Positions 323 through 50,250 of a DNA stretch of 51,474 nucleotides are shown one piece after another. Position 1 is the first letter of the stretch; every line of letters begins with the position of its first letter. Source of the stretch: Basidiobolus meristosporus CBS 931.73 (lineage: Eukaryota; Fungi; Basidiobolomycota). The stretch covers positions 1-51,474 of the forward strand of contig MCFE01000629.1 in the NCBI GenBank assembly GCA_002104905.1, given 5' to 3'. The translations under genes and the position numbers were made by a program. The notes under the pieces are model-generated. The model was not told the origin of the DNA and ran no database searches. It saw nothing but the letters and a program-made list of their open reading frames with translations.

Positions 323-612
323 AGACTTGTTCTGTTGGATAGTGCCACATTGAGCCATGAGTGCCAAATGATGCCATAGTGTGCCAGAGAGGCCAATTGA
401 GCCTCTACCTGGCCACAGAGTGTGAAACATAGCTCCGCATCTTCATGCAAAGCAGCCCCTTTGTTTCACCCATTGTGTTGGAGAAAATCCATTTTTTGAC
501 CTTTTTTTTTGGATCAATGTTGCGCAGGATGTGTTAGAGCACAAGCAGATTGAAGATATGCATCTGGTACTCAATACCCATGGCACTCTGAATCTAGCTC
601 CTGTAGCTTGTA
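323..612. mobile_element. Fold-back MITE copy 1 (left arm only)
   Basis: Starts AGACTTGTTCTGTTGGATAGTGCC after ATT (320-322); near-identical to 29,779-30,068 and 35,528-35,817; ends abruptly at LTR sequence. Confidence 0.85.
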
Positions 613-1530
613 CCTTATTGCATAAGTTACCCCTCACTTTATGTAAGATTACTAGCTACAAGTGTTTCTACATTAGCCAAGTACCCGCGCCAGTACCCAT
701 GACACATGATCAACCCGTGTCACCATCCCTACCATTTCCATACCATATATGGTATCCCCATGTTACACAGGTTCCAGAATACTGATTCCTGATTGGTTGG
801 ATGTGCTGTGCCTCTTAGAGCCTTCCAGCACCTACTTAGAGCGTTCTTAGGTCATTCTAATGTCATTAAGATTTCTATTGATATCCGGAACCTTCTGGAA
901 CACCATGATTAGTAATCACTTAGCCGGTAAGAAAAGTATATAAGGGAGGCTATCCCTCAACAATAAATCATCATCCCTTTTATCAATATACCGACTTGTT
1001 GATTAGTGTGATCACTGCTACCTGCTGCTACCTGAACTTCCAACCCCAGACCACAGGACACTCCCAGGAAACCGTGCTGACAGCCAACTGTCCTTGGAGG
1101 CACTACTTGTGAGGAATACTCAGAGTAGGTATCTTTTATTATATTTGATTCTTTCCCAAGTTTGTTCTTGTGCAGGCAAAGATACTTTTCTGTCTTTGTA
1201 ACTATTGACCACAGCTGCATTCTTATCAAGTCCCTGCTGGTGGAGTTTACAGTTGTTTTGACTTTGGAAGCTTTAGTACATTGTCATCTCAAAGGACGCT
1301 GAACCCAGCACATACTTTTGTTAAGACACCAACCAAGTTGGGGATTGTAGCTCAATAGTTTTCCCTTGACAAGCTTGTGGCTTTATTCCCCTTCACATTA
1401 TATTAGAGACAGAACCCAAGTATTCCTAGCAAGCTTTTGCCAGAGGTTATTGCACCCAGTAAACACCCCACACACAAAACACTTGAGAAGTGTTGGATGT
1501 ATCTCTCCCTTGGACCTATACACCACCACA
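613..1530 (+). mobile_element. 5'-truncated solo LTR (clan related to the 804-bp LTRs)
   Basis: Collinear with 20,470-21,390; ends CACCACCACA like the minus-strand end of the 37,855 and 40,668 LTRs; right flank CTGT. Confidence 0.8.
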
Positions 1531-10767: not shown

Positions 10768-10838
10768 AAGTATGATTAGTCTATCACAATGGTTATATGA
10801 CTAAACTTGTCTGTGGGAGGTATGTTTACCCTACCACA
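10768..10838 (-). mobile_element. About 70-bp terminal remnant of the 804-bp LTR family
   Basis: TAAACTTGTCTGTGGGAGGTATGTTTACCCTACCACA (10,802-10,838) is identical to the LTR termini ending at 38,658 and 41,471; flank ATGC. Confidence 0.75.
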
Positions 10839-10869
10839 ATGCTGCCAAGGTATGCCCAATTTCTCTTGG

Positions 10870-20300: not shown

Positions 20301-22720
20301 GTTGTATAGACCCACTGGCAATGTAGTGGGGTCACAGTGACACCCACTGACAGATGTGCTCATTCCCATGTTTTCTACTTCCCTATATCTCTACTACAAT
20401 TATTTTAGTTTTATCCCATTTGTCTTATCTTATCAGTACTATCACAAAAGCTGGTTGACTACGACACCTGCTTACCTTATTGCATAAGTTACCCCTCACT
20501 TTATGTAAGATTACCAGCTGTAAGTGCTACTATAATGGGCAGGTATCTGCGCCAGTACCCATGACATATGATCAATGTGTGCTACCATCCCTACCATTTT
20601 CATATCTTATATGGTATCCTTATGTTAGACAGGTCTCATAATACTGATTCTTGATTAGTTGGATGTGCTCTGCCTCTTAGAACCATCAGGCATCTACTTA
20701 GAATACTCTTAGGTCATTGTGATGTCATTAAGATTTCTATTAATCTCCGGAAACTTCTAGAACACCATGATTAGTAGTCACTTAGCCGGTGAGAAATGTA
20801 TATAAGGGAGGCTATCCCTCAACAATAAATCATCATCCATTTTATCAATATACCAGCTTGTTCATTAGTGTGATCACTGCTGCCTGCTGCTACCTGAACT
20901 TTGAACCCCAGACCACAGGACACTCACAGGAACCCAGCTGACAGCCAACTGACCTTGGAGGCACTATTTGTGAGGAATACTCAGAGTAGGTATCTTTTAT
21001 TATATTTGATTCTTTGCCAAGTTTGTTCTTGTACAGGCAGAGATACTTTTCTGTCTTTGTAACTATTGACCACAGCTGCATTCTTATCAAGTCCCTGCTG
21101 GCAGAGTTTACAGTTGTTTTGACTTTGGAAGCTTTGGTACATTGTCATCTCAAAGGATGCTGAGCACAGCACATGCTTTTGTTAAGATGCCAACTAAGTT
21201 GGGGATTGTAGCTCAATAGTTTTCCCTTGACAAGCTTATGGCTTTATTCCCCATCACATTAGATTAGAGACAGATCCCAGTATTCCTAGCAAGCTTTTGC
21301 CAGTAGTTATTGCACCCAGTGAACACCCCATACACAAAACACTTGAGAAGTGTTCAACATATCTCTCCCTTGGACTTATACACCACCCCAGTGGTAGCTT
21401 CCAGGGCAGAGTTATTGCCCAGATAAACCTTTCTTATGGGAATAGTCTTTCAGTTGCTGAACCAATCTGTTATACCACAAATATGCTGTGAAGCTCCCAA
21501 GTCAGTATACCATTCATTACTTTGGATACTTGCACTCTCTTGTACAATTACAAATAACTGTTCATCAATGGTTGTATGGTTTGCCTGCTACAGTTTCTGT
21601 TATTTGTTTGCTTGTTTCTTCTTACAGTAGTTGCAGCAACCAGGCTTTCTTTGGTTTTGTTGCTTTCCCTACTTTTCTGAGTGCCTTTCGAACTGAATAA
21701 AGCATTATCTTCATTTTTTGCTGCTTGATCATTACATCTGAGTTCTTCATGTAGAAGTCTTCCTTTGACATAGTGTAGAGTCAAATTGTCTTCTCTGCTT
21801 TCAAAAGAAAGTATGAGTGTCTCATACTTGTCTGGTAGGCTGCAAAGCAGACAGAATATCTTTTCTTCATCATCTACACCAGCATTTATACTGTAAAGTT
21901 CTTCTGCAAGTGTCTCCATTCTGGCAATGAGTTTTAGCATGTCATCATCTGGCTCCTTCCTCATGTTGAAGAGCTTTTGTTTTAAATAAATCTTGCTTGA
22001 TATTGAGTTTGCTCTAAAGATCTTCTCCAAGGATTCCCATGCTGCTTTGGCAGTATTTGAGGAATGGATTTGTCCAATGAAGGTATCTTGCACATTGATA
22101 CATATGGCATTAAAGGCCTTTCTCCCCTTTGCTTGAAACTTCTCCACTTCTTCTGCTGTTCCTTTGGGCTCAATTTCCTTTCCTGTTACTATATTCAAAA
22201 GCTTCCTTTCCTCAAGGTGGATCTGCACCTTGATTCTCCAAAGTCTGTAGTTCTTCCCATCAAACCTCTCCTTTAAAGGGAGATGTTTGTGTTGTTTTGT
22301 TTGCTGGTAGAAGTCATCTTTAGAATAGATTAATGCAATTGGGGCTCACAACCTGTTGCAATTTAAGTAGTAATTTGGATATAAGGAACCTATCAGGAAA
22401 TAGTGATAATTGTTGAACTGTTGTTTATTAATAAAGAAGCTCAGTATTTGTACCTGTGTAGAAGTAATACAGCTGTAACACTAAGTAAGGAGAGTTTCTC
22501 AATATTCAGGAGCATTCTGTAACAGTTTCAGGGTTAGTACATAATGTTAGTAATAGTGCTTATTTGACCTGACTATAGGGAAATAGTCATAAGATCATAG
22601 ATCTGAAGAGAGTGGCAAAGTTAGAGCTGTAAATTTGGCCCTCATTGACCAAGACTAGTCCAGAATTGCTCAGTGAATTCTTAGCTGCTGAATGATGCCC
22701 AATAGCCCAATATTTCCACA
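17384..22720 (-). mobile_element. Full-length but decayed Ty1/copia element
   Basis: LTRs 17,384-17,751 and 22,354-22,720; 5-bp TSD GAAAC on both sides; PBS GGTTGTGAGCCCC; PPT GTGGGGGAG; gag, integrase (HSDICGP...FIDDKTRY), RT (YKARLVAKGYSQ, LYVDD) in copia order. Confidence 0.92.
20322..21390 (+). mobile_element. Solo LTR inserted in the copia protease region
   Basis: TGTAGTGGGG...CACCACCCCA; collinear with 613-1,530; flanks GCAA and GTGG, and removing 4 bp restores the host frame (LEAT/I-T/A-SGSIQL). Confidence 0.85.
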
Positions 22721-30512: not shown

Positions 30513-31977
30513 AATACATAAGCTACACAATGGATGTGGGCATCTTGGAATTGAAGTAGGCTATATAGCCTTGTGAAAGCCATAGCATGGTGGCCCAGAA
30601 TGAAACAAGATATTGAGAAGCTGGTGAAAACATGCCCAAATTGCAAAATCAACCAAGGCCACCTACAGCAAATGCTGGACTCTTTACTCTGGAGCCTGTA
30701 AGACCATTTGAGAGATGGGGGATTGACTTTATTGGAAGACTGCCAACCACTAGGAAATGCAACTGTTGGATCCCTGTAGCAATTGTCCATGCCCCTAAAT
30801 GGCTAGTGGTTAAAACTGTTGCTATAGCCAGTTAACAAGATGTTGCAAGTTTCAACTACCAAGAGATTGTTATGAAGTCAGAATGCCCTGTAAAGATTTT
30901 ATTCAATTTTGGAGCAAACTTTATGGAAAAGATATTGGTAGCTTGCCTGGAAACACAGCAGATCAAACACTTGGAAACTTTGCCATATCACCCTAGAACT
31001 AGTGGAATTGCTGAGTGGTTTAATGGACTATTTGGAAAAATGCTGACCAAATATGCAAATGCAGCTGTCAGCTGATGGAATGAGAATACAGACCCAGCAC
31101 TTTTTTTGTGCAGAGTTAGAGTAGACCACACCACCCAACAATTGCCATTTTACTTAGTGTATGGATGTGAACCAAGGATTCCTGGATATCTCACATAACC
31201 AAAGCTTACAGACACCTTAGAAGATGAACTCAGTTGGCAAAGTAGACACTAGCAACTGGAACAACAATGTCAAGAGGCACAGGCCAAAGTATCTCAAAGT
31301 GCAGAAAAGATGAAGCAGAGATTTGATAAGACTATGTTGCCAGAAGCATTGATGTTTGGGAACTTTGTATTGCTGTGAAACAACAATGGGAAGAAGTTTG
31401 AGCTACAATGGATAGGACCTTTCAAGATCATCAGAGAGTGTCCATTTACAACTTACCAACTGGTAGATAAAAAAGGTAATTTTCAGGAAGATTTAGTCCA
31501 TAGAGACAGACTCAAGCTTGCAAGGCTTGTTAACAATACTGAACCATTGAGATACTCTTATCACAAGAAAAGAGATTCAAGAGAACCCTCTCAAATTTAG
31601 TAGGGGAGACTATTAAGATCTACTGCTTGAATGTCTAAGTTAGATCAATGTTTAGTCAAATGAATTAGTCTTATGTATGGCCTATCAGTATGTCAGTTTT
31701 ATCTATCAAGTCAGTATTATGAATCAGCAGATGAATCCTTAGATCCTTGTCAGACAGAAATAGATATATTAAGTACAATCTAATTGGGTAATGATGATAC
31801 AATCAATTTAGTCATCAGCCACAACCAACATTAGGGTATACAATTAGTCAGCAACTGATCTGCCAATGTAAATAAGGAGCTACTAGAACCTCAATAAAAA
31901 TCAGCTCAAATTTTAGTGAATGCAATACTAGCTAAACTCTTTATTCCTCTACAACTATTATACCAAGACTTGTAGCA

Positions 31978-35196: not shown

Positions 35197-35527
35197 TGTG
35201 GTAAAAAGTTTTTAATTCCACCTAAATACTTACCTAACTTAGTCACTTAGATAGTTTGCTTCAAATCCTATAGAATACTGACCAGACTTCTTGTTGGGAT
35301 TTACTTGGAATATGTTCACCCAAATATCAGATACCCAGAACATGAAAATTCTCAATGCTGTCCAAGCAGCCCCAAGCTGTGCACACATGTTCAAACAGCC
35401 CCAAACTTTGCGCACATGTTCTTGGGACCTTTCCATGTCTATTCTAGCTTCTTGTTATGACAAGACCATGTAAAAGTATAAATTCTACTTTTACATACAA
35501 AATATCATCAAGTGAAAACCACATAAT

Positions 35528-36260
35528 AGACTTGTTCCGTTGGATAGTGCCACATTGAGCCATGAGTGCCAAATGATGCCATAGTGTGCCAGAGAGGCCA
35601 AGTGAGCCTATACTTGGCCACAGAGTGTGAAACATAGCTCTGCATCTTCATGTAAAGCAGCCCCTGTGTTTCACCCATTGTGTTGGAGAAAATCCATTTT
35701 TTGACCTTTTTTTTGGATCAATGTTGTGCAGGATGTGTTAGAGCACAAGCAGATTGAAGATATGCATCTGGTACTCAATACCCATGGCACTCTGAATCTA
35801 GCTCCTGTAGCTTGTATCTTGTCACAAAAATGAATGGCACTATCTTGGTCCACTGGTACTATCTGGCACTATAAGTGCTTTGTATAGATCTTACTTTAGG
35901 GCTAATATTTAAATATAGTGCCAGATAGTACCAGTGGACCAAGATAGTGCCATTCATTTTTGTGACAAGATACAAGCTACAGGAGCTAGATTCAGAGTGC
36001 CATGGGTATTGAGTACCTGATGCATATCTTCAGTTCTCCTGTGCTCTTACACATCCTGAGCTACATTGATCCACAAAAAAAGGTCAAAAAATGGATTTTC
36101 TCCTGCGCAATGGGTGAAACACAGGGGCTGCTTTACATGAAGATGCAGAGCTATGTTTCACACTCTGTGGCCAAGTATAGGCTCACTTGGTCTCTCTGGC
36201 ACACTATGGCATCATTTGGCACTCATGGCTCAATGTGGCACTATCCAACAGAACAAGTCT
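35528..36260. mobile_element. Fold-back MITE copy 3
   Basis: Near-identical to copy 2; flanks AAT/ACT; empty site (ATT on minus) in the homologous LTR at 45,604-45,606. Confidence 0.95.
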
Positions 36261-37854
36261 ACTATAGTTGTTCCCCTAATCACTTTCAATATCTCCAAGA
36301 CTATTCCAGCAGGTTATGAGCCCCTAGATATCACTCTCTGCTATGTCCACTACTGCCATTACTGAAATTTTTCCCTCTGGTGAAAAGCTGGATAAATCCA
36401 ACTACCAAGTATGGAAGGTGATGATGAAGATGCTGCCACAAGAAAGAGGCCATTGGAATATTGTTATGAGAGGAAATTGCCCTCCCTAAAACATGGGAGA
36501 ATAATTCTTGAAGTACTACAAGAAAGTACAAGGTGCCTTTGACTGTATATGCCTTAATCATAATGACAAATTGGTCATTCAATGCTCAAGAGCAAAAATG
36601 GCAAAGAATGTCTGGAAAGTATTAGAAGACACCTACCAGTCATGCTCAGCTGTTTAGAAGCTGAGTCTTAGACAAATATTCTTTACCATCAAGATATTGC
36701 TAGAAGAAGAAATGAAAAATCTAATTAAAAAAATGACCTTGCTGGTGGATGAGATGGAATCTGTTGACATACCAATCACTGATGAGGATGTGATGGTTGC
36801 CATCCTGAATAGCCTGACAGACAAGCTTCAGGGCCATGTGCCAGCCCAGAGCTCAGAACTGGAGATTTGTCATTATGTTATGTATATTGCAGGCTCTTGG
36901 ATGAAGAATCAAGAAAATCAAGTGGCAACAAGAAGGAAGAAAAATGCTTTGAGAAGCAAAGCTAACAGGCACAGGAGGTATCCCAGACCCTTTAAAGTCA
37001 ACAGCAACCTGTTTTGCAACTACTACAAAAGGAAAGGACACACATCAGACCGGTGCCTCAAAAAGAGAGTTAGTCAGCAGAAAAGCTTGATTAATGAAAC
37101 ACCCCAGCAACTGAAGATAAGCAATTCATATCTGTACCTAGCATGACCGCAAACAAGGATTCTCAGAGGAGGTATACTGACTCTGGAGCATCTCAACACT
37201 TTACATACCAAGAAGAGCTATTTACCTAAAATCAGGAAATTCAAACCAAGAAGGTTCTCATGGGTGATGATGGAGCACTTGATGAAGTAGGAGAACAAGC
37301 TGAACAAGCAAGCCTCAAAGCAGTGAAGGAAGCCACAAATGTACCTTCAATGAAGTATTTTATGTACCAGAAATAGCCCAGAACCTACTATTTGTTGCAA
37401 GGCCACAGCAGAAGGACTTGGTCTCAGCTTTGGCAATTCATGATGCAGGATCACAAATTAAAATGGTGCCCATATTGCTTTGGGTGTCAGAAATCTGAAT
37501 TGATGAGCACTGAGCTATATGCTATCATATCTGGATGCCAATGTAGGTAACTCAAGTGAAGAAATGCCAAAGCTTTGTCACAGGAGATTTGCACACATTA
37601 TTTTTGATTTTTTGTGCAAAATGTTCTAAGATCAGCTAATTTCCAGAGTAAAAAATAAAATTCCAGCCAGTTTGGAGCAATGTGAAGCCAGTATATATGG
37701 GAAAAAAGCCAGACAACTGTTCAGGAGCTCTGTGTTAATCAAAACTAAGAAAGTAGCAGATATAATAACTCAGATCTGTGGGGACCTATACAAGCTTAAT
37801 CCTTGATGGTATGAAGTAGTTAATTACTGTTATGGATGATAATACAAGCCGCGC

Positions 37855-38658
37855 TGTGGTGGTGTAGAGGTACTCCTGGGAGAAGCTACACAACTCAAGG
37901 TGTGTGAGGTGTCTGATGGGTGCAATAACCTCTGTGTCTAAACTGCTGGTGTCTTTGTCAATATGTCACTATGGTAAAAGCTCCTGCTTCTTTAGCTCCC
38001 TAGGTGCTCCAAGTGTCTCCAAAGGCCTCTGTGTGTCTTGTGCACTACCCTGAAAAGCTCCTTGATGGCAGGTCTTAGATGTACTGTTGAAGGCAGGTGC
38101 AGTGATCAACTGCTAATCAATAAGGTAGAAGTGTTACTGATAGAAGGGATGATTTATTGATGAGGGATTGCTTTCCCTTAAATACTTTTCCTGATTGCCA
38201 AGTGATTACTAATGACAAGGTTCTAGAAGATTCTAGGTATCAGTGGAATTCTTGATGACATCACTATGAGCTAAAAATATGCCAAGAATGTCCTGGAAGG
38301 TTCTAAAAGGCACAGCACTCTCAACCAATCAGGAATCAGTAGTCTGAAACCTGTGCAACATAGAAATACCATATATGGTATTGAAATGGTAGAGATGGTA
38401 ACACAGACCTAGGTCATGTGTCACGGGTACTGACGCGGGTACTTGCCTTATATAGATACATCTACTGATCACAAAGCTGAATAACATCTGGGATAACTAA
38501 TGCTAATAACTAATCAGGGTAAACATCATATGGGGATAATACTGATAATATGGGCAAAAGAAGAATGGGATAATACTGATAAGATAAAATATGGATAAAT
38601 ATATCATAATGACTATATGAATAAACTTGTCTGTGGGAGGTATGTTTACCCTACCACA
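37855..38658 (-). repeat. 3' LTR (804 bp)
   Basis: No difference from 40,668-41,471 found by eye. Confidence 0.95.
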
Positions 38659-38672
38659 TCCACCCCCCACTT
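38659..38672 (-). other. Polypurine tract
   Basis: Minus strand AAGTGGGGGGTGGA abutting the 3' LTR. Confidence 0.85.
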
Positions 38673-38736
38673 GAGCTAAAAAGTTTCAGGGAACCTTTTA
38701 GCTAACCACTGTAAGTTTGGAGAACAAAGTGCTCTC

Positions 38737-40593
38737 TCAGTCTTCCTCAATGAAGCCACCTGTCCTTTCTTGAGATAGAAATCTACATGATGTCATTGAT
38801 CGGATATTGTTTGAGTCCACACCACAGAAGGTTGCTGTTAGTCCTGGGCTCTCTGAGTATATAGTATACCATGCTGAACCATCTGGGTAGTTCACTGCAG
38901 TTGCTCTTGCTTTTACCTCCCATGGTCTTCCAAGAAGTAATTCAAAGTTAGCCTTTGCACATATGAATACTGGGATCTCATGGGGTATTCCTTCAATGAT
39001 GAGAGGGAAGCTGTGAATAATTCCTAAAAGCTTTGATTGCCCTGAGTTGGCATCCTTCATGCTCCAATTGATATTGGTGTCTATGGGCAATAAGTCTTTG
39101 CATGGTAGTTGTTTCCAAGCCTCCAAAGGCATCACACATATCTCAGATCCACTGTCTATATGACATAGGATTTCTTGATTATGCACAGTTCCTGTAGTTG
39201 TTGCAGTTGCCACTGAGTAGTAGTGTTTCTGGCTTTGATGCAGCTTACTGATATTTTGGCTTCCTTGAACTGTCCTGACCTGGTTGCCTTGAGTTGATTC
39301 AATTGGATGCTTTCTTATTCTGATATGCTCATCCAGAGTCTTTCTTACAGATGGTGATACACTGAGTAGCTCTCCAACCTTGATTGATATGTTGCTTCCT
39401 AATATATGACTTGTCAGAGCCTCTGGGGTACCATTTTGCTTGACTCTAGGCTGCATGTGGTAGTTGTTGGCCTTGGCAGACTCTTGTAAAATTAATGGGG
39501 GTGATGCTTTCTTCTCAATCACAACTTCTGGCTCACATCTTGGTACTTTTGTTGCTGGGCCTGGATTAGCCATTTTTTCAGGATGGTGTCTCTTTGAAGC
39601 ATAAATTGAAGCTATATGATCTTGGGCCTCTCTGGGGTCCTCATAGTCAAAGTTCAGAACTTCAGCTGGATCAAAGTAGTCAGGATCTTCTTCTTCATGG
39701 AGGTGAACCTTTCTTGTATGAGAGGTGACTTGCTTGTAGTGAACTCTCATTCCTCCTTGTCCAAATGCTGTGGATAATTTGTCACCATGCTTACTGACTA
39801 TGTATCCCTGAGGACTATATAGGACATCACCTGTGGATAGTAATGACTGAAGCTCTTGGCAATTTCTCTTGGAATGGTTGGCAGAGTCACACCACATGCA
39901 TGTATATTTGACTTCTTTCTCTACTGGCTTCTGACCATATGCTTTGCTGGCAAGTAGCAAAGAGAGTTTCTCTAGTTGCTGTGTCAGCTCCTGAATTTGA
40001 GTGCTTTGATTGCTGGGATTAAGTATGTCTTGGCTATCTTGGTTTTGTCCTGGGCTTGAAAGAAGCTTTCTGATTGGTGAGGTTTCTTCAGGGGCAAGTA
40101 AAATCTGCTTAGCTAACTGAAATGCAGGCAGTGAACTCATAGCTTTCACAGTAGGATTGTTTTCAATCCTTCTAACCAGGCCTTCTGGTAGTGCTCTGAG
40201 CAGATAGGCAGATAAAGTCAGATCAGTGATAATGCCTTGGGCTTTCAGTGACTCTCCAATTTGCTCAAGGCCACTCAAGTATTCTTTCAATGGTAGCAGC
40301 TTAAACTTGCTATAAGCAAAGTTCTCCAAGTCTTGAAGTGTGTAGTCAACTTGTCTCTCTCCATATTCATCAATCAAGTAGCTCTTCAAGAGGGTCCAGT
40401 TTGTCAGCAGATCATTTCTTTCATATAAAGAGAGCATGATCTCATCAGTGCTGTAGGGGGGCATCTCTTCAGCCATAATGGCCTCAGGTATTTTGTGGGC
40501 TCTGCAGAAAAGCTCCCACCTCTTGATGAAAGCATTAACTTTGGTTCCATCAAAGAAAGGGGTTCCTTGCATTCCTGGTAAAGGTAGATCCAT
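38737..40593 (-). CDS. gag: Gag-aspartic protease polyprotein, 618 aa, intact
   Basis: N-terminal PFFDG..V..FI; CCHC knuckle CMWCDSANHSKRNC; protease HIDSGSEICVM and FELLLGRPW; stops about 65 bp before the PPT. Confidence 0.9.
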   Translation of the reverse strand: MDLPLPGMQGTPFFDGTKVNAFIKRWELFCRAHKIPEAIMAEEMPPYSTDEIMLSLYERNDLLTNWTLLKSYLIDEYGERQVDYTLQDLENFAYSKFKLLPLKEYLSGLEQIGESLKAQGIITDLTLSAYLLRALPEGLVRRIENNPTVKAMSSLPAFQLAKQILLAPEETSPIRKLLSSPGQNQDSQDILNPSNQSTQIQELTQQLEKLSLLLASKAYGQKPVEKEVKYTCMWCDSANHSKRNCQELQSLLSTGDVLYSPQGYIVSKHGDKLSTAFGQGGMRVHYKQVTSHTRKVHLHEEEDPDYFDPAEVLNFDYEDPREAQDHIASIYASKRHHPEKMANPGPATKVPRCEPEVVIEKKASPPLILQESAKANNYHMQPRVKQNGTPEALTSHILGSNISIKVGELLSVSPSVRKTLDEHIRIRKHPIESTQGNQVRTVQGSQNISKLHQSQKHYYSVATATTTGTVHNQEILCHIDSGSEICVMPLEAWKQLPCKDLLPIDTNINWSMKDANSGQSKLLGIIHSFPLIIEGIPHEIPVFICAKANFELLLGRPWEVKARATAVNYPDGSAWYTIYSESPGLTATFCGVDSNNIRSMTSCRFLSQERTGGFIEED

Positions 40594-40646
40594 GGTCTTG
40601 ATAATTTGTTCTTTCTTAAGTCTTCTAGGGGCAGTTCAGTCAAACC

Positions 40647-40663
40647 CCCCACGTTGGGTGCCA
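40647..40663 (-). other. Primer-binding site, tRNA-Lys(CUU)-type
   Basis: TGGCACCCAACGTGGGG versus the classical Lys1,2 PBS TGGCGCCCAACGTGGGG; 4 nt from the LTR end. Confidence 0.8.
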
Positions 40664-40667
40664 AATA

Positions 40668-41471
40668 TGTGGTGGTGTAGAGGTACTCCTGGGAGAAGCT
40701 ACACAACTCAAGGTGTGTGAGGTGTCTGATGGGTGCAATAACCTCTGTGTCTAAACTGCTGGTGTCTTTGTCAATATGTCACTATGGTAAAAGCTCCTGC
40801 TTCTTTAGCTCCCTAGGTGCTCCAAGTGTCTCCAAAGGCCTCTGTGTGTCTTGTGCACTACCCTGAAAAGCTCCTTGATGGCAGGTCTTAGATGTACTGT
40901 TGAAGGCAGGTGCAGTGATCAACTGCTAATCAATAAGGTAGAAGTGTTACTGATAGAAGGGATGATTTATTGATGAGGGATTGCTTTCCCTTAAATACTT
41001 TTCCTGATTGCCAAGTGATTACTAATGACAAGGTTCTAGAAGATTCTAGGTATCAGTGGAATTCTTGATGACATCACTATGAGCTAAAAATATGCCAAGA
41101 ATGTCCTGGAAGGTTCTAAAAGGCACAGCACTCTCAACCAATCAGGAATCAGTAGTCTGAAACCTGTGCAACATAGAAATACCATATATGGTATTGAAAT
41201 GGTAGAGATGGTAACACAGACCTAGGTCATGTGTCACGGGTACTGACGCGGGTACTTGCCTTATATAGATACATCTACTGATCACAAAGCTGAATAACAT
41301 CTGGGATAACTAATGCTAATAACTAATCAGGGTAAACATCATATGGGGATAATACTGATAATATGGGCAAAAGAAGAATGGGATAATACTGATAAGATAA
41401 AATATGGATAAATATATCATAATGACTATATGAATAAACTTGTCTGTGGGAGGTATGTTTACCCTACCACA
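40668..41471 (-). repeat. 5' LTR (804 bp)
   Basis: Direct repeat of 37,855-38,658. Confidence 0.95.
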
Positions 41472-44149
41472 GCGCATGTGTCTGTTTCATGGAAAGAAAG
41501 GAAGAAGCTCTGTTTAAGCTCAAGGAGCTTAAAGCCATGGTGGAGAGAGAAACTGGTCAAATATCCAGAAAATACACTTTGACAATGGTGGAGAATATAC
41601 CTCAAAACTCTTCAGCCACTTCTTGAGAATTCATAGGATAAAGCAAGAGACTAATGAACACTACTCCCCACAGCAAAATGGAGTGGCACAATGTGCAAAC
41701 AGACTGTTACTTGATATTGCAAGATCTATGATCCATGATCAAAATTATCCTATGACTTTTGGGCAGAATTAGTTGCCACAGCTGTGTAGCTTATGAATAG
41801 GAGTAATAGCAGTATACTCTGTGATATACTCCATTTGAAGCCTGGTGCTGATACAGACCAAATGCAGAACATCTAAAAATTTTTGGGTGTAGAACATATA
41901 CTAAGAAACTGCCTAGAAATCAGTCAAAACTTGAGCCAAAAAGTGTAAAATGCATATTTTTGGGCAACTGCAATGAGGGTAGAGCATACTGACTCTGCAA
42001 TATTGAAGCAAAGCAGCTGATCAAGTCCAGGGATGAATTGTTTGATGAGAACTCAAAATTATCACAAAAAAGGACATTGATGCTGGCATATATCTGATCT
42101 CAAGTTTGCCAATAATCAGGATTGAATCAGAGCCAAACAATGAGAACCTCTTTACTCCATAGTGCTCTACAACTGTGGTTCAGCCTGAATCAGTGCCCTG
42201 GAATATTCCAGAAGTGATCATTCCAGTATCAAATGCCAGGAGATCCAACATGAGAAGAAATGGCCCAAATTACTATATCAATGAAGGAACAAACCTAGCC
42301 TATGCCAATTCAGTCCATATTGATGAGCCCCAGGCTGTAAAAGAGGCTGTAGATAGCACTTAGACATATTTTTGGAGATCTTCAATGAGTGAAGAGTATC
42401 AGGCCCTGATGAAAAAGCAAACTTGGTACTTGGTCAAATTACCAATCAACCAAAAATCAATTGGATGAGGATGTGTCTACAAGACAAATGCAAAGCTGAT
42501 GGTACAATTGAAAGATACAAAGCAAGACTTGTGGACAAAGGATACTCTCAAACAAAAGGACTTGACTATACTGAGACCTTTGCACTGGTAGCCAACTTTA
42601 ATTGCATCAGATTAATAGTGGCTATTGAAGTCAAATCTAAGATTTCTATACATAAAATGGATGTAAAAACTGCATTTTGGAATGAGGAAATTTATGAGGG
42701 CATGCATATGGACCAGCCTGATGGGTTTGTTGGCCAAGATAACCCTAATTTAGTCTGCAAGCTAAAAAAGTATCAATATGAACTCAAACAATCACCAAGA
42801 GCCTGAAAGTGCAATATAGATTCTTATTGAGAGTCTTTGGGTTTCAATAGGAGTAATGCTGACTATAGTATATTATAAGCCAAATCAGACAAATCCAGTT
42901 CTAATGGCTCTATATATGGATGATCTTCTTATAGCTGCCAATAACCTAGAAACATTAGATGAGACTAAATCTAGCTTATCAAAAGAATTGAAGATGCCCA
43001 ATCTTGGAGAACTCAGATACTACTTAGAGATAAAGATCTTCATAGACAGAAGTACCCAGATTATCTCCCTAAGCCAATCAAGGTATATTTAAGATGTACT
43101 AGAGAAGTACTGTATGGAAGACTGTTAACCAGCAGCTACCTTAACAGAGACAAACATTAACTTGGTCAAAACTCAACCTACTCAAGAGGGCCTGGTGCCA
43201 TTTGGAAGCCCTGACTTTCCTTGTCAGTCTATGGTCATCTTTCTGATGTATATCATGCCTGGATCACATCCAGATATTTAATATTCAGTGGAAGTTGTTA
43301 GCCAGCAAAATCAGAACTGTAGATCTGATCATATTGCAGCAGTTAGGTGGATTTTTAGATACCTCACGGGATATGCTGATATCTGCTCAAGGTACACCTA
43401 AAATGATTCAGAACAAACTCTTTTGGCATACTCTGATGCTGATTGGGGACAAAATTTAGTGGACAGTATATCCACCACAGGATACACCTTTCTTTACTGG
43501 CAGGGAGCAATTTCATGGAATTCAGGAAAGCAACAAACCATAGTACTTTCTACCACAGAGGCAGAGTATATAGTAGCCTGTGAAGCTGCAGAAGAAGCAA
43601 TATGGCTAAGAAAGCATTTTACAGATTTGGGTCTATGTTAGTAACTGCCTATTACTTTGTTTCTAGATAATCAGGGGTGCATACCATTGGGTAGAAATCC
43701 AACTTTTCATGCTAGAACTAAGCACATAGATATTAGACATCATCTCATACATGAAGCTATAGAGAATATTGTTGTTGGCTTAGTTTACTGTCTTGCAGAT
43801 GAAATGATTGCAGACATATTTACCAAACCATTAGCTAGAGTCAAGTTTGAATATCTTAGATCAAAATTATGACTAGTCAGTGTGAGCATTTAGTTTAGTG
43901 AGACTGTTGTAAAAAGCTTGTAACTCCACCCAAGTACTTACCTAACTTAGTCACTTGGATCTTTACCTCCAAATCCTAGAGAATACTGATCAAATTCCAT
44001 GTTGTTATTTATTTACTTTCTTTAAGGTGGACTTGCATCTTGATTCTGGAAATTGTGTAATGCTTCCCACAAAACTGCTTGCCATCTGACCCTTTGAGAT
44101 GTGGACCTAACCTCTGTAGAGTACTTGGTAATTCCAGGTGTAGTAAATA

Positions 44150-45240
44150 CTAGGTATGCTGCTCTTTCTACCACTTGCAATATATAAGAATTGCAGAGAA
44201 ATAGAGAGTTTATGTTGCATAGTATCCATTGACACTTATACTAGTTTTATTGAGGTTCTAGCCGCTCCTTGAATACATTTTGCTAGAGTAAGTGCTGACT
44301 AGTCACTCTTTGTAAGGTAAGCTGTGGCTGATGACCTATTTTATTGAATCATCATCACCCAATAGATCATACTTAGTATGTCTCTTTTTGTCTGTTACAA
44401 ATCTTCCAATGCAACTGCTGACCAGCGCTACTGATTTGATAGATGAAATCAACTTACTCACAGGCTAAGCACATCTACTAATGAGTTGTGTGAAAACTGA
44501 TCTCACTTCAGCATATAAGCAGTAGCTCATAAGATCCACTCTTACCAAAGCTGAGATGGTTCTCCTCAATCTCTTTTCTTATGATGGCAATATCTTGAAG
44601 GTTCAGCTTTGTCAGTTTATCATGCAGGTTTAAGTCTGAAAGCTTTAAGCCAAAACATCTTTGATATTTCCTTGTTTGTCCACTAGCCTATACATTGCAC
44701 CTAGGCATTGTCAGAAAAGCTTGAGTGGACTTATCCATTGGGGTTCAAACTTCTCCTCAGTGTGGTTTTCAGTAATCCAGAGTTCCCAGCTGTTTGTGCC
44801 TCTGGCAGCATAGTCTTATTAGATATATGCTTCTTCACCTCTGCACTCTTGAACACTTTTACCTCCACCTCTTGACATCTTTTCCCATAGCTGACATCTA
44901 CTTGGCTGATGGAGGTCATATTCCAAAGTGGCTGGAAGCTTTGGTTGTGAGAGATCTCCAGCAACTCTTGCTTTGCATCCCTACACTATTCAACAAAGCA
45001 ATTGCTGAGTGGTATTATGTACTCTAACTCTGCAGGCTACTGCTGCTTGGTCTATGTACTCATCCTATTTACCAAAAGCTCCATTGTTGAGCATATTCCC
45101 AAAAAGCTTGTCACCCCTCTGAGGAGCTCTGTTATTTCTGGAATGATATGCCAGAGCTTCTAAGCTTCTGGTCTGGTGCATTTCCAGGTGGGTTTCCAAT
45201 GTCTTAGCCACTGACCATATAGTGTCATGGTTAATGGCTA
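44150..45240 (-). mobile_element. Gypsy family B integrase tail plus 3' LTR
   Basis: Aligns with 25,633-26,800; LTR about 44,150-44,535. Confidence 0.75.
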
Positions 45241-45249
45241 CTGACACTT

Positions 45250-45905
45250 ATACAGTTTCATTGTTTATATTTATACTGTTGAGCACTGAGTTGGCAGTTT
45301 GTCTTTGACATTAAGACACAGGCAGTCAAAGAAACTTTGTTTGTGCTTCTGGTACTTTCAGGCTGCATTTCCTACATCTTTGGGTGGGCATTCTTCTCCC
45401 ATAATAACACTCCAAAGGCCTCTTTCCTGTAGCATCAGCTTCATCCTCCCTTTCCAAACTTGGTAGTCAGATCCATCCAACTCTTCAGCAGAGGGAAAAC
45501 ACCAGTAATGGTAGTAGTGGACATTTCAGAGAGTGACAGCTTGGGGCTCATAGCCTGTTGTAAGAGCTTCGGAGATATTGGAAGTGATTGGGAGAACAGG
45601 TAGAATATGTGGTTTTCACTTGATGATTTATTAGATGCAAGGGTAATTCGTGTACATTTCCATGGTCTTGGCAAAACAAACACGTGGAATATATTTCGGA
45701 AGGTCCCACAAGCATGTGGGCAAAGTTTGAGGCAGTTTGGACGGCTCTGAGATACCTCATGCTCAGGGTACAGGATATTTCGGTGAAAATATACCCAAGT
45801 AAATTCCGACCAGGTATTTGGCCAGAATTATCCAGGATTTGTAGACTATGGTCGAAGTGACGAAGTTGGGCGAATATTCAGGTGTGGTGACGGAATTCCC
45901 AACCA
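45250..45905 (-). mobile_element. Copia family C 5' LTR, PBS and gag start
   Basis: LTR 45,556-45,905 aligns with 35,197-35,527 plus 36,261-36,311; PBS GGCTATGAGCCCC; gag KLDGSNYQVWK.RMKLML..RGLW. Confidence 0.8.
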
Positions 45906-45914
45906 TCCATACAT

Positions 45915-46177
45915 CTTCCTAGCAGCTGGACATGACCGGTAGGTGTCTTCTAAGGTCTTTCAAGCATTCTCGGCTGTTACGGCCCTTAAGCATCGAGTCA
46001 GCCGCTGGTCTTTGGACGAATTGGAGATTATTCATGTCTTGGGTACCTGATACGTTGGTACAGTATTCCAAGCAAGCCCGGACAATGAATTCGGGCCAGA
46101 TATTCCAACATTTGTAGACCAGGATCAAGGTGACCAAGTTAATGGGATATTTAGGTGTAATCACGAAATTCACTACA
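45915..46177 (-). mobile_element. Second copia C LTR start fused to a gag fragment (internal deletion)
   Basis: Begins TGTAGTG; aligns with 45,750-45,900; TTAGAAGACACCTACCGGTCATG matches gag at 36,620-36,645. Confidence 0.65.
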
Positions 46178-46826
46178 TGCACATCATTGGTCACGGGTAC
46201 TGGATACAATGGAATGGTCGAGTAGGTGTACCACCACCGTGGGTCAAGGCCTACCCACCCTATACGCCGGTGGTGCAACTCCCATCGGCTGAACCTGACA
46301 CCAGGGGAGAGAAAATCCCCTTCCCCCCCCAGAGGCGGCGATCGATCTGGAGGTGATTGGGCTGGGTCTGCGGGTGCAGGTGCAGATGCAGGTATCACCC
46401 GATGCGCAGAAGGATCCATCAGAAGCTAAGGAAGGGGGAGGGAATATATCTACCCACATCTACTCTTGGGCCCACTCGGGGACTTCTCAACCATCGGGGT
46501 CCCCTGGGAGTGAGTCACGATGATCCGGCCCGATGCCTCGTCCCACGGTAGGTCCACCGACAGATATGGTGGGTGGTGGTGGTGGACCCAGTGCCCAAGC
46601 CATGGGATGATGATCCGTGACTCGCAAATCACTCCGACGACAAATCGAAGGGGACCGGAAGGAATTTTTTTTTGGGGGGGGACAGAGGTTGGTGAGTTTT
46701 TTTTTTTTAATCAAAATGGAATCTATCTCGAATCTAGGTGCAAATGGAATGTACCGGTGAACTGAGTTGTTTGGAAGTAGTTTACTTTACATGAAGTGAG
46801 GGGGCAGGGAGGCGGGGAGAGGGGAA

Positions 46827-47714
46827 TCAGGCACTTTCGTTCAAGAAAGACTTGGCGAATTGGGGGAGAACGAAGGCGGCCTCGTGAACGGCCGAGTTGT
46901 AGTACTTGCAAAGCTTGGCCTCCTCTTCGGGGGTCCAGGTGCGGAGGGGCTTCTTGAGGTTTCTTCCCTCCTCCTTGCAGCACATGATGAACCCGATTTG
47001 TCCGGAGGGGTAGGTAGGGATGGTGGTGAAAGCGTACTCGACCACGGGGTACATCTCCTTGGAGAAGTCCAACACCTTCTTGATGAGGGGAAGGTGCAAC
47101 CACATGCACTCCCCTTGGGTGCAAACGATACCACCCTCACGAAGAGCCCCCTTCATAAGGTTGTAGAAGTTCTCTTGGTAGAGGGACTCGGCGGGGCCGA
47201 CTGGGTCGGAGGAGTCGGTGATGATCACGTCGAAGGTGTTCACCTTGTCCTGCAAGTAGGGGAAACCGTCGCCGATGTGGACGGAGACCTTCGGGTGCTG
47301 GAAACCGACCGCCATCGAGGGGAGGTACTTCTTGGCGTTACGGATGACCGCCTCGTCGATTTCGCAGAGGACAACCTCCTCGACGCACTCGTGCTTGACG
47401 ACCTCACGAAGGACACCACCGTCACCACCACCGATGACAAGGACTCTCTTGGGGTTGGGGTGAGCCATCAAGGGGAGGTGGGTGATCATCTCCTGGTAGG
47501 AGAACTCGTCTCTCTCGGTAGCTTGGATGACACCATCGAGGACCAAGACGTTGCCGTAGTTCTTGGATTGGAACACCAAGACGTCTTGGTAAAGGGACTT
47601 CTCGTGGTGGAGGACCTCGGCGACCTCGAGGGACATGGCTTGTCCAGGCCACAAGGTGCAGTTCTCGGTGAACCAACCGTCTTTGATCAAATGATGGGTG
47701 ATGGTGTTAGACAT
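46827..47714 (-). CDS. SPE3: Spermidine synthase (putrescine aminopropyltransferase), intronless, 295 aa
   Basis: GWF.E...[68 protein letters not shown]. Confidence 0.97.
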
Positions 47715-47774
47715 GACAAATACCTATACAAACCGTTTCGCAAGGGCGACTCCACGCATTCGCGAAGTGCCCTC

Positions 47775-47781
47775 TTTTATA
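47775..47781 (-). promoter_or_regulatory. Candidate TATA box for SPE3
   Basis: TATAAAA about 60 bp upstream of the ATG. Confidence 0.5.
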
Positions 47782-47843
47782 CGCCATCCCGAGAAATCCT
47801 TCCCCCAATCAGCGGCCGAGCTGGGACGCACCGAGAAGTCCAA

Positions 47844-48616
47844 TCACCTTCGGGATCGGTTTCTTTCATCACGGTTCGTGGCCATTGGCTGGGGGAGATA
47901 GGCCCGCTGGTTAGGGAATGCCCACTTCAGGACTAAACCGTTTTCACGGTCGCTCCTTGGTAAGCGATGTGATTGATTCTGGGATGATTCGGAGATGGTA
48001 CACGGGATAGGATCCTCATCATCGAACGATGGCGAACTCCTAGGTGGATCAACATTGGGATCATTTTCTCGGTCGATTTCCGCGTTCGACAATGGAATTC
48101 GCATGTCGGAAGAACCTTCTACCGGGAGAACGGGGGTTTGCGCTGCCCTCGACCTAGCGTGCTGTGGAAGAGGGCCCTCCTGTGCTGGACTGAACGAAGG
48201 TCGAATTACTAAGCGACCACCTCCCTCGGAGCGATCGGTGTATCCAGAGGCTGACACAGGCTGAGGAGGTGGATGGCCAAGATCGCCAATATATGTCCCT
48301 GATACCTGTAAACAATGGATTCCGTGATCCCCAAGGAATCCACGGTAGCGGTATGCTGAGCACACTTCGGTACCAAACACGACCATAGATTCCGGGGGAT
48401 AGCAGGGGCTTCGTCACGCCGACAACACAGGGCTTGGCCGGCCTGCACTCGGCGAGATATCGCTATGCTCAGACTGTGCATCCCTGTGGTGATGGCGGAA
48501 ATTGCAACGATGATGATGGCGATGGCCACAGCGACGATCACGATTCGTGTTGATGACACCCACCCAGAAACTGGTGAATGTTGTGACTGACCAAGTGGCA
48601 TGGCTACTCCGCGCAA
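47844..48616 (-). other. Overlapping low-complexity ORFs, coding status unresolved
   Basis: 180-aa and 135-aa ORFs in different frames, no recognisable domain; overlaps the likely SPE3 promoter. Confidence 0.2.
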
Positions 48617-49322
48617 TCTATGCGGCTCAGCCCCCCCCCACCCATTGATACTTGGCCAATGCCCATGGATCAGTGTGGGTGGGTGACAATAAGACTATAT
48701 CTAGATGAGATGGGTGTTATCTGCCATGCACCCCGAATATCCTAATATTGGTCAAAGCTGACTCAGTCAAGACGGGGTGAGGGTTTCTACCCTACCTCCC
48801 ACGGATGGTGGGCTCGGATCCGGTCTTACACCTCCATATTTGCCATAACCGGCTGATGCATTAAGGAGGGATCATCAACGATGGTTCTCGTTAACCAAAT
48901 AGGGGTGGCCCGCGCCCACAGAGTTGAGTTGAGTCAAGTCAGGGAAGGCCTTGTAGGCGATAGGGAGCCCGCCGTGGAGCCAATGGAAACGGCTACCAAC
49001 GTAGATCTTGAGACACTGGTCATCAAAGTTCCGGTCAAGACCCAAGACTAATGCGCCCCACAGGTGTCTGGGATCCGATTCTGAATGGTGCACGAAGTTA
49101 CAGTGGGAACTGGGAGATAAATAACCAGGTTTATTTGTAACAATGTAACAATGCAACATCTACCCGCCGATGTTCAGGGTGGCGAGGGGGGAGGGGGAGG
49201 GATAATTCAGGCTTTCTAATGCAGTCAATGCGAAGATGTCTTGACGAGAAGGGGAGTTCGTATTTACAACCACGGCCACAACCACGACCACTCGGGTTGA
49301 GCCGGTGGATTCGTTCGGTGGT

Positions 49323-50177
49323 TTACCAGCGGCCCCGTGGGTACAGAGGATTTTCTGATACGGGGGAATGGCTCGCATGGGATTCTGGGTGGTCTGACTT
49401 GCCTCGGGTGTGAAGCTTGGCATGGCGGCGCAGGTTCGACAGCACAGAGAAGCGTCGGTTGCATCCGTCCTCCTTGCATTGGAACGGTTTCTCGCCGGTG
49501 TGAGAATAGATGTGGGTGTTCAGGGAGCTGGGCCTGGCAAATCGTTTCTTACAGTATGTACACCGGTACGGCTTGTGTACCGTCGTCGGTGACTGGTGAG
49601 TAGAATAGGGGTGGGAGGAATGGCTGGTGGCTAGATTGATGGCGGATCTTGTGTTGGCCTCCCATGGCTCTGGCCCATGTACCTTTTGGAAGGCGCTAGG
49701 ATAGGCGACCTTGGACCAATCGATATACTCTCTTTCGTAGTTGGTGGACTCTTTCCCGTCGAAGTATGGGCCAGCCATGGACACTGGAGATGCGAGTCCG
49801 GTCTTTTCAGCCACTTTGATTAGGTCCATTGGTAAACGAGCAGTGTCCGACTGTGGGGTAGCCAACAATGGAGAGGAGCTCGCAGACGAGATGCTGGAGG
49901 GCTTCTCTCCTCTAGGATAGAAGCTAATGCTGTCTCCAAGCATTTCGGCCTCGCAGTTGCAACCGGGCTTGCAGCAGCCGAACAGGCTGACGTCTTTGGG
50001 GTCCTCTTTTGGGCTCCATGAGGATTGGAACCGACTAGAGTGGGTGAGAGGCGGTGGAAGCGGGCTGGTGGACGAATCCAGCAGATCGGGGAACAGGGAG
50101 CGAAGATTCGGGAGCTGAAGTGATGTGCGTAATCCCATATCGTCACCAGAGGTGGATTGCATGGTCTGGAATGCCAT
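49323..50177 (-). CDS. C2H2 zinc-finger transcription factor (two C-terminal fingers), 284 aa
   Basis: YRCTYCKKRFARPSSLNTHIYSH-TGEKP-FQCKEDGCNRRFSVLSNLRRHAKLH; Ser/Pro-rich N-terminus. Confidence 0.9.
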   Translation of the reverse strand: MAFQTMQSTSGDDMGLRTSLQLPNLRSLFPDLLDSSTSPLPPPLTHSSRFQSSWSPKEDPKDVSLFGCCKPGCNCEAEMLGDSISFYPRGEKPSSISSASSSPLLATPQSDTARLPMDLIKVAEKTGLASPVSMAGPYFDGKESTNYEREYIDWSKVAYPSAFQKVHGPEPWEANTRSAINLATSHSSHPYSTHQSPTTVHKPYRCTYCKKRFARPSSLNTHIYSHTGEKPFQCKEDGCNRRFSVLSNLRRHAKLHTRGKSDHPESHASHSPVSENPLYPRGRW

Positions 50178-50250
50178 TGTCTAGGGAAGTGGCAAAGGAA
50201 TGGTGGATGGGGAGAGAACGGTTTCGAGGAATCGCCTTCCCGTGGGTGGA

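What the first reader, a model, noticed from the sequence alone, without database searches (positions are those of the whole stretch)
37851..41475. An LTR clan that appears to integrate at CpG (NCGN 4-bp targets)
Seen: the young element has a perfect GCGC target duplication, although CpG is extremely rare in its host copia. The related solo LTR at 20,322-21,390 has flanks GCAA and GTGG, and only a 4-bp duplication restores the host frame. Both flanks derive from GCGN by CpG deamination on opposite strands (CG to CA, CG to TG). The other two readable termini have flanks CTGT (1,531-1,534) and ATGC (10,839-10,842), again TG at positions 2-3. So 4 of 4 sites centre on CG or its decay product. Known: some insect gypsy-group integrases are sequence-specific for short CG-rich targets. 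Inference: this clan's integrase, supplied in trans, targets CpG, possibly methyl-CpG, which would steer it into silenced repeats and away from CpG-rich genes.
Basis: partly seen in the sequence, partly recalled or inferred. Interest (0 to 1): 0.78.

Follow-up and report, generated by a model that had tools for sequence, protein, structure and literature searches.

The report
LTR clan inserting at CG-centred 4-bp sites
A family of jumping genes in the fungus Basidiobolus seems to insert where a CG sits in the middle of its four-base target, a habit already known from the fruit-fly element ZAM and from Ginger1 transposons; nothing here shows that it reads DNA methylation.

Summary
The young element (37855-41471, minus sense) has two identical 804-bp LTRs and an exact 4-bp GCGC duplication. 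One GCGC copy keeps the host copia integrase in frame. Its target, CCGCGCA, was the only CGCG outside this clan's own LTRs in about 41.6 kb of repeats, where only 0.24% of dinucleotides are CG (chance about 0.002).

The 1,069-bp solo LTR (20322-21390) needs a 4-bp duplication to restore its host frame. At positions 2-3 its two duplicate copies read CA and TG, and a paralogous copia reads TA. All three are CpG decay products, so the target was probably GCGG. The other two flanks (CTGT, ATGC) add little.

That leaves two informative sites out of four. I put the CG-centred preference at about 0.7, because this is a known kind of integrase specificity (ZAM: CGCGCg; Ginger1: CCGG/CCGT). Methyl-CpG reading is untested, about 0.1.

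The element encodes only Gag and protease. Its relatives are Ty3/gypsy polyproteins of Smittium and Furculomyces. I could not retrieve an autonomous partner.

The scan has noted the same habit on other pieces of this genome, including two follow-ups.

The parts
37851..37854 (.). Left copy of the 4-bp target duplication, GCGC. The pre-insertion site read CCGCGCA.
37855..38658 (-). 3' LTR of the young element in its own (minus) sense. 804 bp, TG...CA, identical to the other LTR.
   Evidence: (0 mismatches in 804).
38659..38668 (-). Polypurine tract, GGGGGGTGGA on the minus strand, abutting the 3' LTR.
   Evidence: Read directly.
38740..40593 (-). Intact 618-aa Gag-protease ORF with a CCHC knuckle (CMWCDSANHSKRNC) and a protease DSG motif. 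There is no RT, RNase H or integrase.
   Evidence: translation; DUF4100, below threshold; relatives are Ty3/gypsy Gag-Pol proteins of Smittium and Furculomyces.
40647..40663 (-). Primer-binding site TGGCACCCAACGTGGGG, 4 nt from the 5' LTR. It resembles the complement of the tRNA-Lys(CUU) 3' end. The tRNA assignment comes from general knowledge and was not tested here.
   Evidence: Read. No tRNA gene lies in the window.
40668..41471 (-). 5' LTR of the young element in its own (minus) sense.
41472..41475 (.). Right copy of the 4-bp target duplication, GCGC.
20322..21390 (+). Solo LTR of the related 1.07-kb family, inserted in the protease region of copia 17384-22716. It shares its termini and a core of about 370 bp with the young LTR.
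20318..20321 (.). Left duplication copy of the solo LTR, now GCAA.
21391..21394 (.). Right duplication copy of the solo LTR, now GTGG. The ancestral target is inferred to be GCGG.
   Evidence: The paralogous copia site at about 15195 reads GTAG in the same orientation.
611..1530 (+). Sister copy of the 1.07-kb LTR, 90% identical to the solo LTR. Its first ~150 bp are cut off by another insertion. The 3' flank is CTGT (1531-1534).
10774..10838 (-). 65-bp terminal fragment of a clan LTR, 89% identical to the young LTR end. The flank is ATGC (10839-10842).

Best explanation
This is a clan of Ty3/gypsy-type LTR elements in Basidiobolus. It includes a very young, non-autonomous Gag-protease family of 3,617 bp and an older family with a 1.07-kb LTR. 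They share LTR termini (TGTGGT...ACCACA). An integrase supplied in trans, not present in the window, cuts the target with a 4-bp stagger. It prefers a short target with CG at its centre: GCGC here, and GCGG inferred at the older site. The most likely mechanism is direct recognition of a short, roughly palindromic DNA motif by the integrase complex, as shown for Drosophila ZAM (CGCGCg) and seen in the CCGG/CCGT duplications of Ginger1 transposons, which carry a gypsy-like integrase.

Shown: the 4-bp duplication length at two sites, one exact GCGC duplication, and the CpG-decay signature at the second site. Inferred: that the preference belongs to the integrase, and that it holds genome-wide.
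For: 1. An exact GCGC duplication flanks LTRs that are 100% identical, and the host frame is kept with one copy.
2. A random target centred on CG has P = 0.0024, and GCGC has P = 0.0005. The site was one of only two CGCG in 41.6 kb of repeats, and the other lies inside a clan LTR.
3. At the solo LTR, the host frame requires a 4-bp duplication. Positions 2-3 read CA in one copy, TG in the other and TA in the paralogous copia, which is the pattern of one CpG decaying independently three times. Unrelated flanks would show the CA/TG pattern with P = 0.013.
4. The solo LTR has lost about 7 of the ~10 CpG that its sister copy keeps, so decay of both duplicate copies is plausible.
5. Control: copia 17384-22716 in the same window has a 5-bp duplication, GAAAC, with no CpG.
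6. Precedent: ZAM integrase binds and targets CGCGCg (PMC2527525). Drosophila Gypsy-group families have 4-bp duplications with palindromic target motifs (PMC3276498). Ginger1 has 4-bp CCGG/CCGT duplications (PMC2836005).
7. Leads only, not checked here: other notes of this scan report the same habit on other pieces of this genome.
Against: Only two sites in this window are informative, and the hypothesis was formed after seeing the first. The solo-LTR duplication copies differ at 3 of 4 positions, and the position-4 difference (A/G) needs an extra, non-CpG transition. The flank CTGT of the little-decayed copy 611-1530 is more simply an original TG, which suggests that either the preference is not strict or this site does not fit. 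No integrase of the clan was seen. With this few sites, GCGC specificity cannot be told apart from a general N-CG-N preference.
Confidence: 0.7

Rival explanations
1. Chance. The clan inserts with no sequence preference beyond a 4-bp stagger, and the GCGC duplication and the CA/TG flanks are coincidences picked out after the fact.
For: Only four sites exist in the window. Two of them are uninformative against a 16.6% background. The pattern was defined after reading the data.
Against: The joint chance of a CG-centred intact duplication (0.0024) and a CA/TG opposite-strand pattern at the second site (0.013) is about 3e-5. The paralogous copia site independently shows a decay product, TA, at the same two positions.
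Confidence: 0.15
2. Methylation-guided integration. The integrase or a partner reads 5-methyl-CpG, so insertions are steered into silenced repeats and away from unmethylated, CpG-rich genes.
For: All four clan sites lie in repeats, although 324 of the window's 422 pre-insertion CpG are in the 6.3-kb genic part. If targets were chosen by CpG count alone, P = 0.003. In arthropods, Copia elements that captured a methyl-CpG binding domain are known (PMC6673714; title and abstract seen).
Against: Purifying selection against insertions in compact fungal genes explains the repeat-only survivors. No clan integrase was available. Six distant relatives were scanned: four long ones (P0007, P0013, P0019, P0032) show only DUF4100, protease, RT, RNase H and integrase domains, without an MBD, CXXC or chromodomain, and no Pfam family matched beyond the protease region in P0082 and P0129. 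Surviving CpG in the repeats are 5-fold enriched for GCGC (20/107 against 11/324 in genes). If that reflects poor methylation of GCGC, the preferred target would be the least methylated CpG class. No methylation data are at hand.
Confidence: 0.1
3. Regional rather than nucleotide-level preference. Insertions favour stretches that still hold CpG (younger or less silenced DNA), and the CpG in the duplication is a by-product.
For: None specific. This is a generic possibility for integrases tethered to chromatin.
Against: The CG sits exactly at positions 2-3 of the duplication at both informative sites. The neighbourhood of the young insertion is not CpG-rich: the nearest other CpG in the host copia are at 37051 and 37148, some 700-800 bp away.
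Confidence: 0.05

Closest known systems
ZAM, a Drosophila Gypsy-group errantivirus (PMC2527525)
   Same: An LTR retroelement with a 4-bp target duplication and a highly specific, palindromic, CG-rich target (CGCGCg). Its integrase binds the target site directly. The young element's site here reads CCGCGCA with GCGC duplicated.
   Different: ZAM is an insect element that is autonomous and carries env. Here the host is an early-diverging fungus with extreme CpG depletion, the copy is a Gag-protease-only non-autonomous element, the integrase is unseen, and the motif may be looser (GCGG inferred at the second site).
Ginger1 DNA transposons with a Gypsy-like integrase (PMC2836005)
   Same: 4-bp duplications that are highly specific and centred on CG (CCGG 75%, CCGT/ACGG 24%), with TGTNR termini like Gypsy LTRs. 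This shows that gypsy-type integrases can have N-CG-N specificity.
   Different: Ginger1 are cut-and-paste elements of animals with terminal inverted repeats, not LTR retrotransposons. The 4-mers seen here are GCGC and GCGG, not CCGG.
Non-autonomous LTR elements that keep gag only (for example plant TR-GAG; from general knowledge)
   Same: LTRs, primer-binding site and polypurine tract are intact, the capsid gene is open, the replication enzymes are missing, and mobilisation is in trans.
   Different: This family also keeps the protease. Its host is a zoopagomycete fungus.
Arthropod Copia elements that captured a methyl-CpG binding domain (PMC6673714)
   Different: A different superfamily. No such domain was found here or in the scanned relatives of this Gag-protease, and no methylation data exist for this locus.

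Membership tests
Ty3/gypsy (Metaviridae) LTR retrotransposon | Direct long terminal repeats ending TG...CA with short inverted termini | tested here: met
   804-bp identical LTRs. TGTGGT...ACCACA is a 6-bp inverted terminus.
Ty3/gypsy (Metaviridae) LTR retrotransposon | Primer-binding site next to the 5' LTR and polypurine tract next to the 3' LTR | tested here: met
   TGGCACCCAACGTGGGG lies 4 nt from the 5' LTR, and GGGGGGTGGA abuts the 3' LTR. The tRNA-Lys assignment is from general knowledge only.
Ty3/gypsy (Metaviridae) LTR retrotransposon | Gag and protease homologous to those of Gag-Pol polyproteins with the order PR-RT-RH-IN | tested here: met
   The best HMMER hits (E 1e-27 to 1e-40) include Smittium Gag-Pol polyproteins, Furculomyces and Smittium hypothetical proteins, and unnamed Logan polyproteins. 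Hits P0007, P0013, P0019 and P0032 carry protease/DUF4100 followed by RVT_1 and RNase H; all but the shorter P0007 also carry Integrase_H2C2 (P0013 and P0032 rve too).
Ty3/gypsy (Metaviridae) LTR retrotransposon | Own RT, RNase H and integrase (autonomy) | tested here: not met
   The internal region is 2,009 bp and holds only the 618-aa Gag-protease ORF. This is a non-autonomous derivative.
Sequence-specific CG-centred integration (ZAM / Ginger1 type) | Fixed 4-bp target duplication | tested here: met
   An exact GCGC duplication at the young element. At the solo LTR the host frame demands 4 bp.
Sequence-specific CG-centred integration (ZAM / Ginger1 type) | CG at the centre of the duplication in the great majority of insertions | tested here: inconclusive
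   One of one intact duplication meets it. One decayed duplication is consistent with it (CA/TG, plus TA in the paralogue). Two single flanks with TG are uninformative. Four sites are too few.
Sequence-specific CG-centred integration (ZAM / Ginger1 type) | Integrase that binds the target motif, or a palindromic motif that extends beyond the duplication | not testable with these tools
   No clan integrase could be retrieved, and there are too few sites for a logo.
Methyl-CpG-guided retrotransposon (MBD-Copia type) | A methyl-CpG or CpG reader domain in the element's proteins | tested here: inconclusive
   None is in the Gag-protease and none appeared in six scanned distant relatives. The clan's own Pol was not available.
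Methyl-CpG-guided retrotransposon (MBD-Copia type) | Target sites methylated before insertion | not testable with these tools
   No methylation data.

The most novel reading that the evidence does not exclude
The clan's integrase, or a domain fused to it, tells methylated from unmethylated CpG. In that case a fungal retrotransposon would use the host's own silencing mark as a homing signal into already-dead repeats. This would be a self-limiting safe-harbour strategy in a genome whose repeats are running out of CpG.
Probability: 0.08. Interest if true: 0.85.

Novelty: new member of a known kind. Interest (0 to 1): 0.45.

Why it matters
If the preference holds genome-wide, Basidiobolus offers a culturable fungal system with a very young, apparently active LTR family whose integrase picks a CG-centred 4-mer. 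That sets up an unusual dynamic. The host's methylation-driven CpG decay removes the element's targets from repeats (0.24% CG) but leaves them dense in genes (about 5% CG). Target choice, selection and silencing would therefore be directly coupled, and measurable.

It also has practical uses. It gives a rule for dating and reconstructing decayed insertions, since duplication copies reading TG/CA point to a former CG. It also gives a candidate short-motif-specific integrase for study. As a kind of mechanism it is not new: ZAM and Ginger1 already show it.

Tried and rejected
2. The word-based protein search with the Gag-protease found nothing, and its exact sequence is not in the protein collection.
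3. The HMMER search found only distant relatives (24-29% identity) from Smittium and Furculomyces, plus unnamed Logan proteins. It found no autonomous Basidiobolus partner.
4. An 18-nt LTR-end pattern scanned against metagenome and viral contigs gave 16 loci. None resembles the element beyond the 18-mer and none is CpG-depleted in the same way, so these are chance or unrelated repeats. None was taken for human DNA.
5. I looked for an empty-site paralogue for the ATGC flank. Homology with 5077 onward begins at the junction itself, and the paralogue's upstream sequence matches nothing else, so there is no control.
6. I checked whether the other GCGC sites in the repeats are hidden LTR junctions. 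Apart from the young element's own two junctions, two are followed by TG and two are preceded by CA, about the number expected by chance. One pair (13827 and 15020) brackets a copia gag region, not an LTR.
7. I tried to extract duplications for the 1.86-kb LTR family at 25633-27496. Its flanks are inverted copies of the same internal region, so no duplication could be read.
8. The idea that GCGC is part of the LTR was rejected. The internal LTR junctions read AATA|TG and CA|TCCA.
Full report
**What the window is.** The first 45 kb is a nest of transposons with 39-43% G+C and CpG observed/expected of 0.02-0.12. The last 6 kb is genic, with 54% G+C and CpG observed/expected of 0.66-1.09. An intronless spermidine synthase ORF (46830-47714, minus) is in public protein sets and clusters at 90% identity or more with a Basidiobolus ranarum protein. 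The genome is therefore a Basidiobolus, in line with what earlier notes of this scan call B. meristosporus.

**The young element.** The LTRs at 37855-38658 and 40668-41471 are 804 bp and identical at every position.
- They start with TG and end with CA, and have a 6-bp inverted terminus (TGTGGT...ACCACA).
- The internal junctions read AATA|TG and CA|TCCA, so the LTR limits are exact.
- The flanks are GCGC on both sides, and the next bases outward differ (C and A). The duplication is exactly 4 bp.
- With the element and one GCGC removed, the host copia integrase reads on in frame as ...DDNTSRACVCFMERKEEALFK....
- The element is in minus sense. It has a polypurine tract (GGGGGGTGGA) against the 3' LTR. 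A primer-binding site (TGGCACCCAACGTGGGG) lies 4 nt from the 5' LTR. From general knowledge this resembles the complement of the tRNA-Lys(CUU) 3' end; no tRNA gene lies in the window to check it against.
- Its single 618-aa ORF has a CCHC knuckle and a protease DSG motif, and nothing else.

**What family it belongs to.** Pfam gives only a sub-threshold DUF4100 match. The word-based protein search found nothing. The exhaustive HMMER search was therefore justified, and it returned 672 relatives.
- The best named hits (24-29% identity) include Smittium culicis Gag-Pol polyproteins, plus hypothetical proteins of Furculomyces boomerangus and other Smittium species.
- Hits P0007, P0013, P0019 and P0032 carry protease or DUF4100, then RVT_1 and RNase H. 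All but the shorter P0007 also carry Integrase_H2C2, and P0013 and P0032 carry the rve core as well.
- This is a Ty3/gypsy lineage of zoopagomycete fungi, and the copy here is a non-autonomous derivative that keeps only Gag and protease.
- Six distant relatives were scanned. P0007, P0013, P0019 and P0032 show only these domains, with no MBD, CXXC or chromodomain. No Pfam family matched beyond the protease region in P0082 and P0129 (apart from a YL1 match in P0082's N-terminal part).
- No autonomous Basidiobolus partner could be retrieved, so the clan's integrase remains unseen.

**How unlikely the GCGC site is.** In the pre-insertion repeat landscape of 41.6 kb:
- 0.24% of 4-bp windows are centred on CG, and 0.046% are GCGC.
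- The target CCGCGCA was one of only two CGCG. The other lies inside a clan LTR at 686.
- The host copia had 7 CpG in about 5.4 kb, and the nearest others are 700-800 bp away. The site is a lone CpG cluster, not part of a CpG-rich patch.

**The solo LTR.** The LTR at 20322-21390 (1,069 bp, plus sense) sits in the protease region of the copia at 17384-22716.
- It shares both termini and a core of about 370 bp with the young LTR.
- Deleting the LTR plus 1, 4 or 7 bases restores the copia reading frame, so among realistic duplication lengths only 4 bp fits.
- The two duplicate copies now read GCAA and GTGG.
- At the protein level the junction is ...LEA(T)(A)SGSIQL..., and a second copia (13.8-17.0 kb, plus strand) reads ...LEATTSRSVQL... 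there.
- Codon by codon, positions 2-3 of the target are CA in the left copy, TG in the right copy and TA in the paralogue. Position 4 is G in the right copy and in the paralogue.
- Three different CpG decay products at one dinucleotide, in three copies, is what one ancestral CG would leave behind. The most economical ancestor is GCGG.
- The extra G-to-A change at position 4 of the left copy is an ordinary transition and is the weak point of this reconstruction.
- Decay of both copies is plausible. The solo LTR keeps only 3 of the roughly 10 CpG that its sister copy (611-1530) still has, and it is about twice as derived (35 against 17 lineage-specific changes in 480 columns).
- For two unrelated flanks, the CA/TG pattern has a chance of 0.013.

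**The two remaining termini.**
- The background for CG, TG or CA at positions 2-3 is 16.6%.
- The copy at 611-1530 is the less decayed one, with 9 CpG kept. A former CG in its flank should more often than not still be CG, so the TG there is about as likely under either hypothesis. Its other end is cut off by an unrelated insertion.
- The 65-bp fragment ending at 10838 abuts a repeat whose only paralogue (from 5077 onward) starts its homology at the junction itself. No empty site can be reconstructed.
- '4 of 4' should therefore read: two informative sites, both centred on CG, and two neutral ones.

**A control in the same window.** The copia at 17384-22716 has LTRs 90% identical to each other and a clean 5-bp duplication, GAAAC, with no CpG. 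The 4-bp, CG-centred habit is not a property of every LTR element here.

**Mechanism.** The length of a target duplication is set by the stagger of the two strand transfers in the integrase complex. Short palindromic target motifs reflect its two-fold symmetry (PMC3276498). Direct precedents exist:
- ZAM integrates into CGCGCg, and its integrase binds that site in vitro (PMC2527525).
- Drosophila Gypsy-group families make 4-bp duplications (PMC3276498).
- Ginger1 transposons, whose transposase is a Gypsy-type integrase, make 4-bp duplications that are CCGG (75%) or CCGT/ACGG (24%) (PMC2836005).

I therefore read the clan as using an integrase, supplied in trans, with an intrinsic preference for a CG-centred 4-mer. 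With this few sites I cannot separate a strict GCGC or GCGS motif from a general N-CG-N preference.

**The methylation idea.**
- In its favour, all four sites lie in repeats although 324 of the window's 422 pre-insertion CpG are genic. If targets were drawn by CpG count, P = 0.003.
- Against it, selection against insertions in compact fungal genes explains that without any reader. No reader domain was found in the scanned relatives. No methylation data are available.
- One observation points, if anything, the other way. Among the 107 CpG that survive in the repeats, 20 are GCGC (19%), against 11 of 324 (3.4%) in the genic part. Flanking T before the CG, or A after it, is rare. If GCGC survives because it is poorly methylated or is better repaired, the favoured target would be the least methylated class of CpG. 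That is speculation and needs 5mC data.

**Relation to earlier notes of this scan.** Several first-reader notes and two follow-up reports, on other pieces of the same genome, describe gypsy-type LTR families with 4-bp duplications centred on CG (GCGC, CCGC/GCGG, ACGT, CCGG/ACGG). One concerns a 1.07-kb LTR that may be the family of the solo LTR here. I could not read those stretches, so they are leads and not evidence. They did point me to Ginger1, which I then checked in the paper itself. They also mean that this habit has been found before in this scan, on other DNA.

**Limits.**
- The scans of metagenome and viral contigs with an LTR-end 18-mer returned only unrelated sequences.

**Verdict.** The inference of a CG-centred 4-bp target preference is probably right (about 0.7), but here it rests on two sites. 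It is a known kind of integrase specificity seen in a new host lineage. The methyl-CpG reading is unsupported (about 0.1).

Noticed in passing
window 1-45200 compared with 45201-51474: Surviving CpG in the repeats are strongly biased to the GCGC context: 20 of 107, many as TGCGCA or GCGCAT. In the genic part the figure is 11 of 324. TCG and CGA contexts are rare. This suggests context-dependent methylation, deamination or repair.
   Followed up: partly
window 17384-22716: A copia element on the minus strand with 364-bp LTRs about 90% identical to each other and a clean 5-bp target duplication, GAAAC. It hosts the solo LTR.
   Followed up: yes
window 22720-28949: A 1.86-kb LTR (25633-27496, starting TGTTACAAG) is flanked on both sides by inverted copies of the same gypsy internal region (gag to RT, ending in ...ATAATAC). 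This palindrome-like arrangement may come from inversion between inverted LTRs. It is unexplained.
   Followed up: partly
window 29775-30516, 35524-36264, 299-616: A 742-bp element that matches itself in both orientations (foldback or long-TIR type, ends TAATAGACTTGTTC...). There are two full copies and one partial copy. One copy interrupts a gypsy LTR and another truncates the clan LTR at 611.
   Followed up: no
window 1-323, 3598-4053, 6104-6459: Fragments of a CACTA/EnSpm-type transposase gene (Pfam Transposase_21), in three copies about 85% identical.
   Followed up: no
window 1519-2211 (-): An aspartic-protease ORF of another gypsy-like element, 25% identical to the young element's protease. 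It is the host of the LTR copy that ends at 1530.
   Followed up: partly
window 45900-51474: A genic island with normal CpG content. It holds spermidine synthase (46830-47714, minus) and a C2H2 zinc-finger protein (49326-50180, minus). The boundary with the repeat nest at about 45.2-45.9 kb is sharp.
   Followed up: partly
L001-L014 (metagenome Ga0126343 and others): The LTR-end 18-mer TATGTTTACCCTACCACA occurs in 11 contigs of a single metagenome, with no other similarity to the element. It is presumably an unrelated repeat of some organism in that sample.
   Followed up: partly
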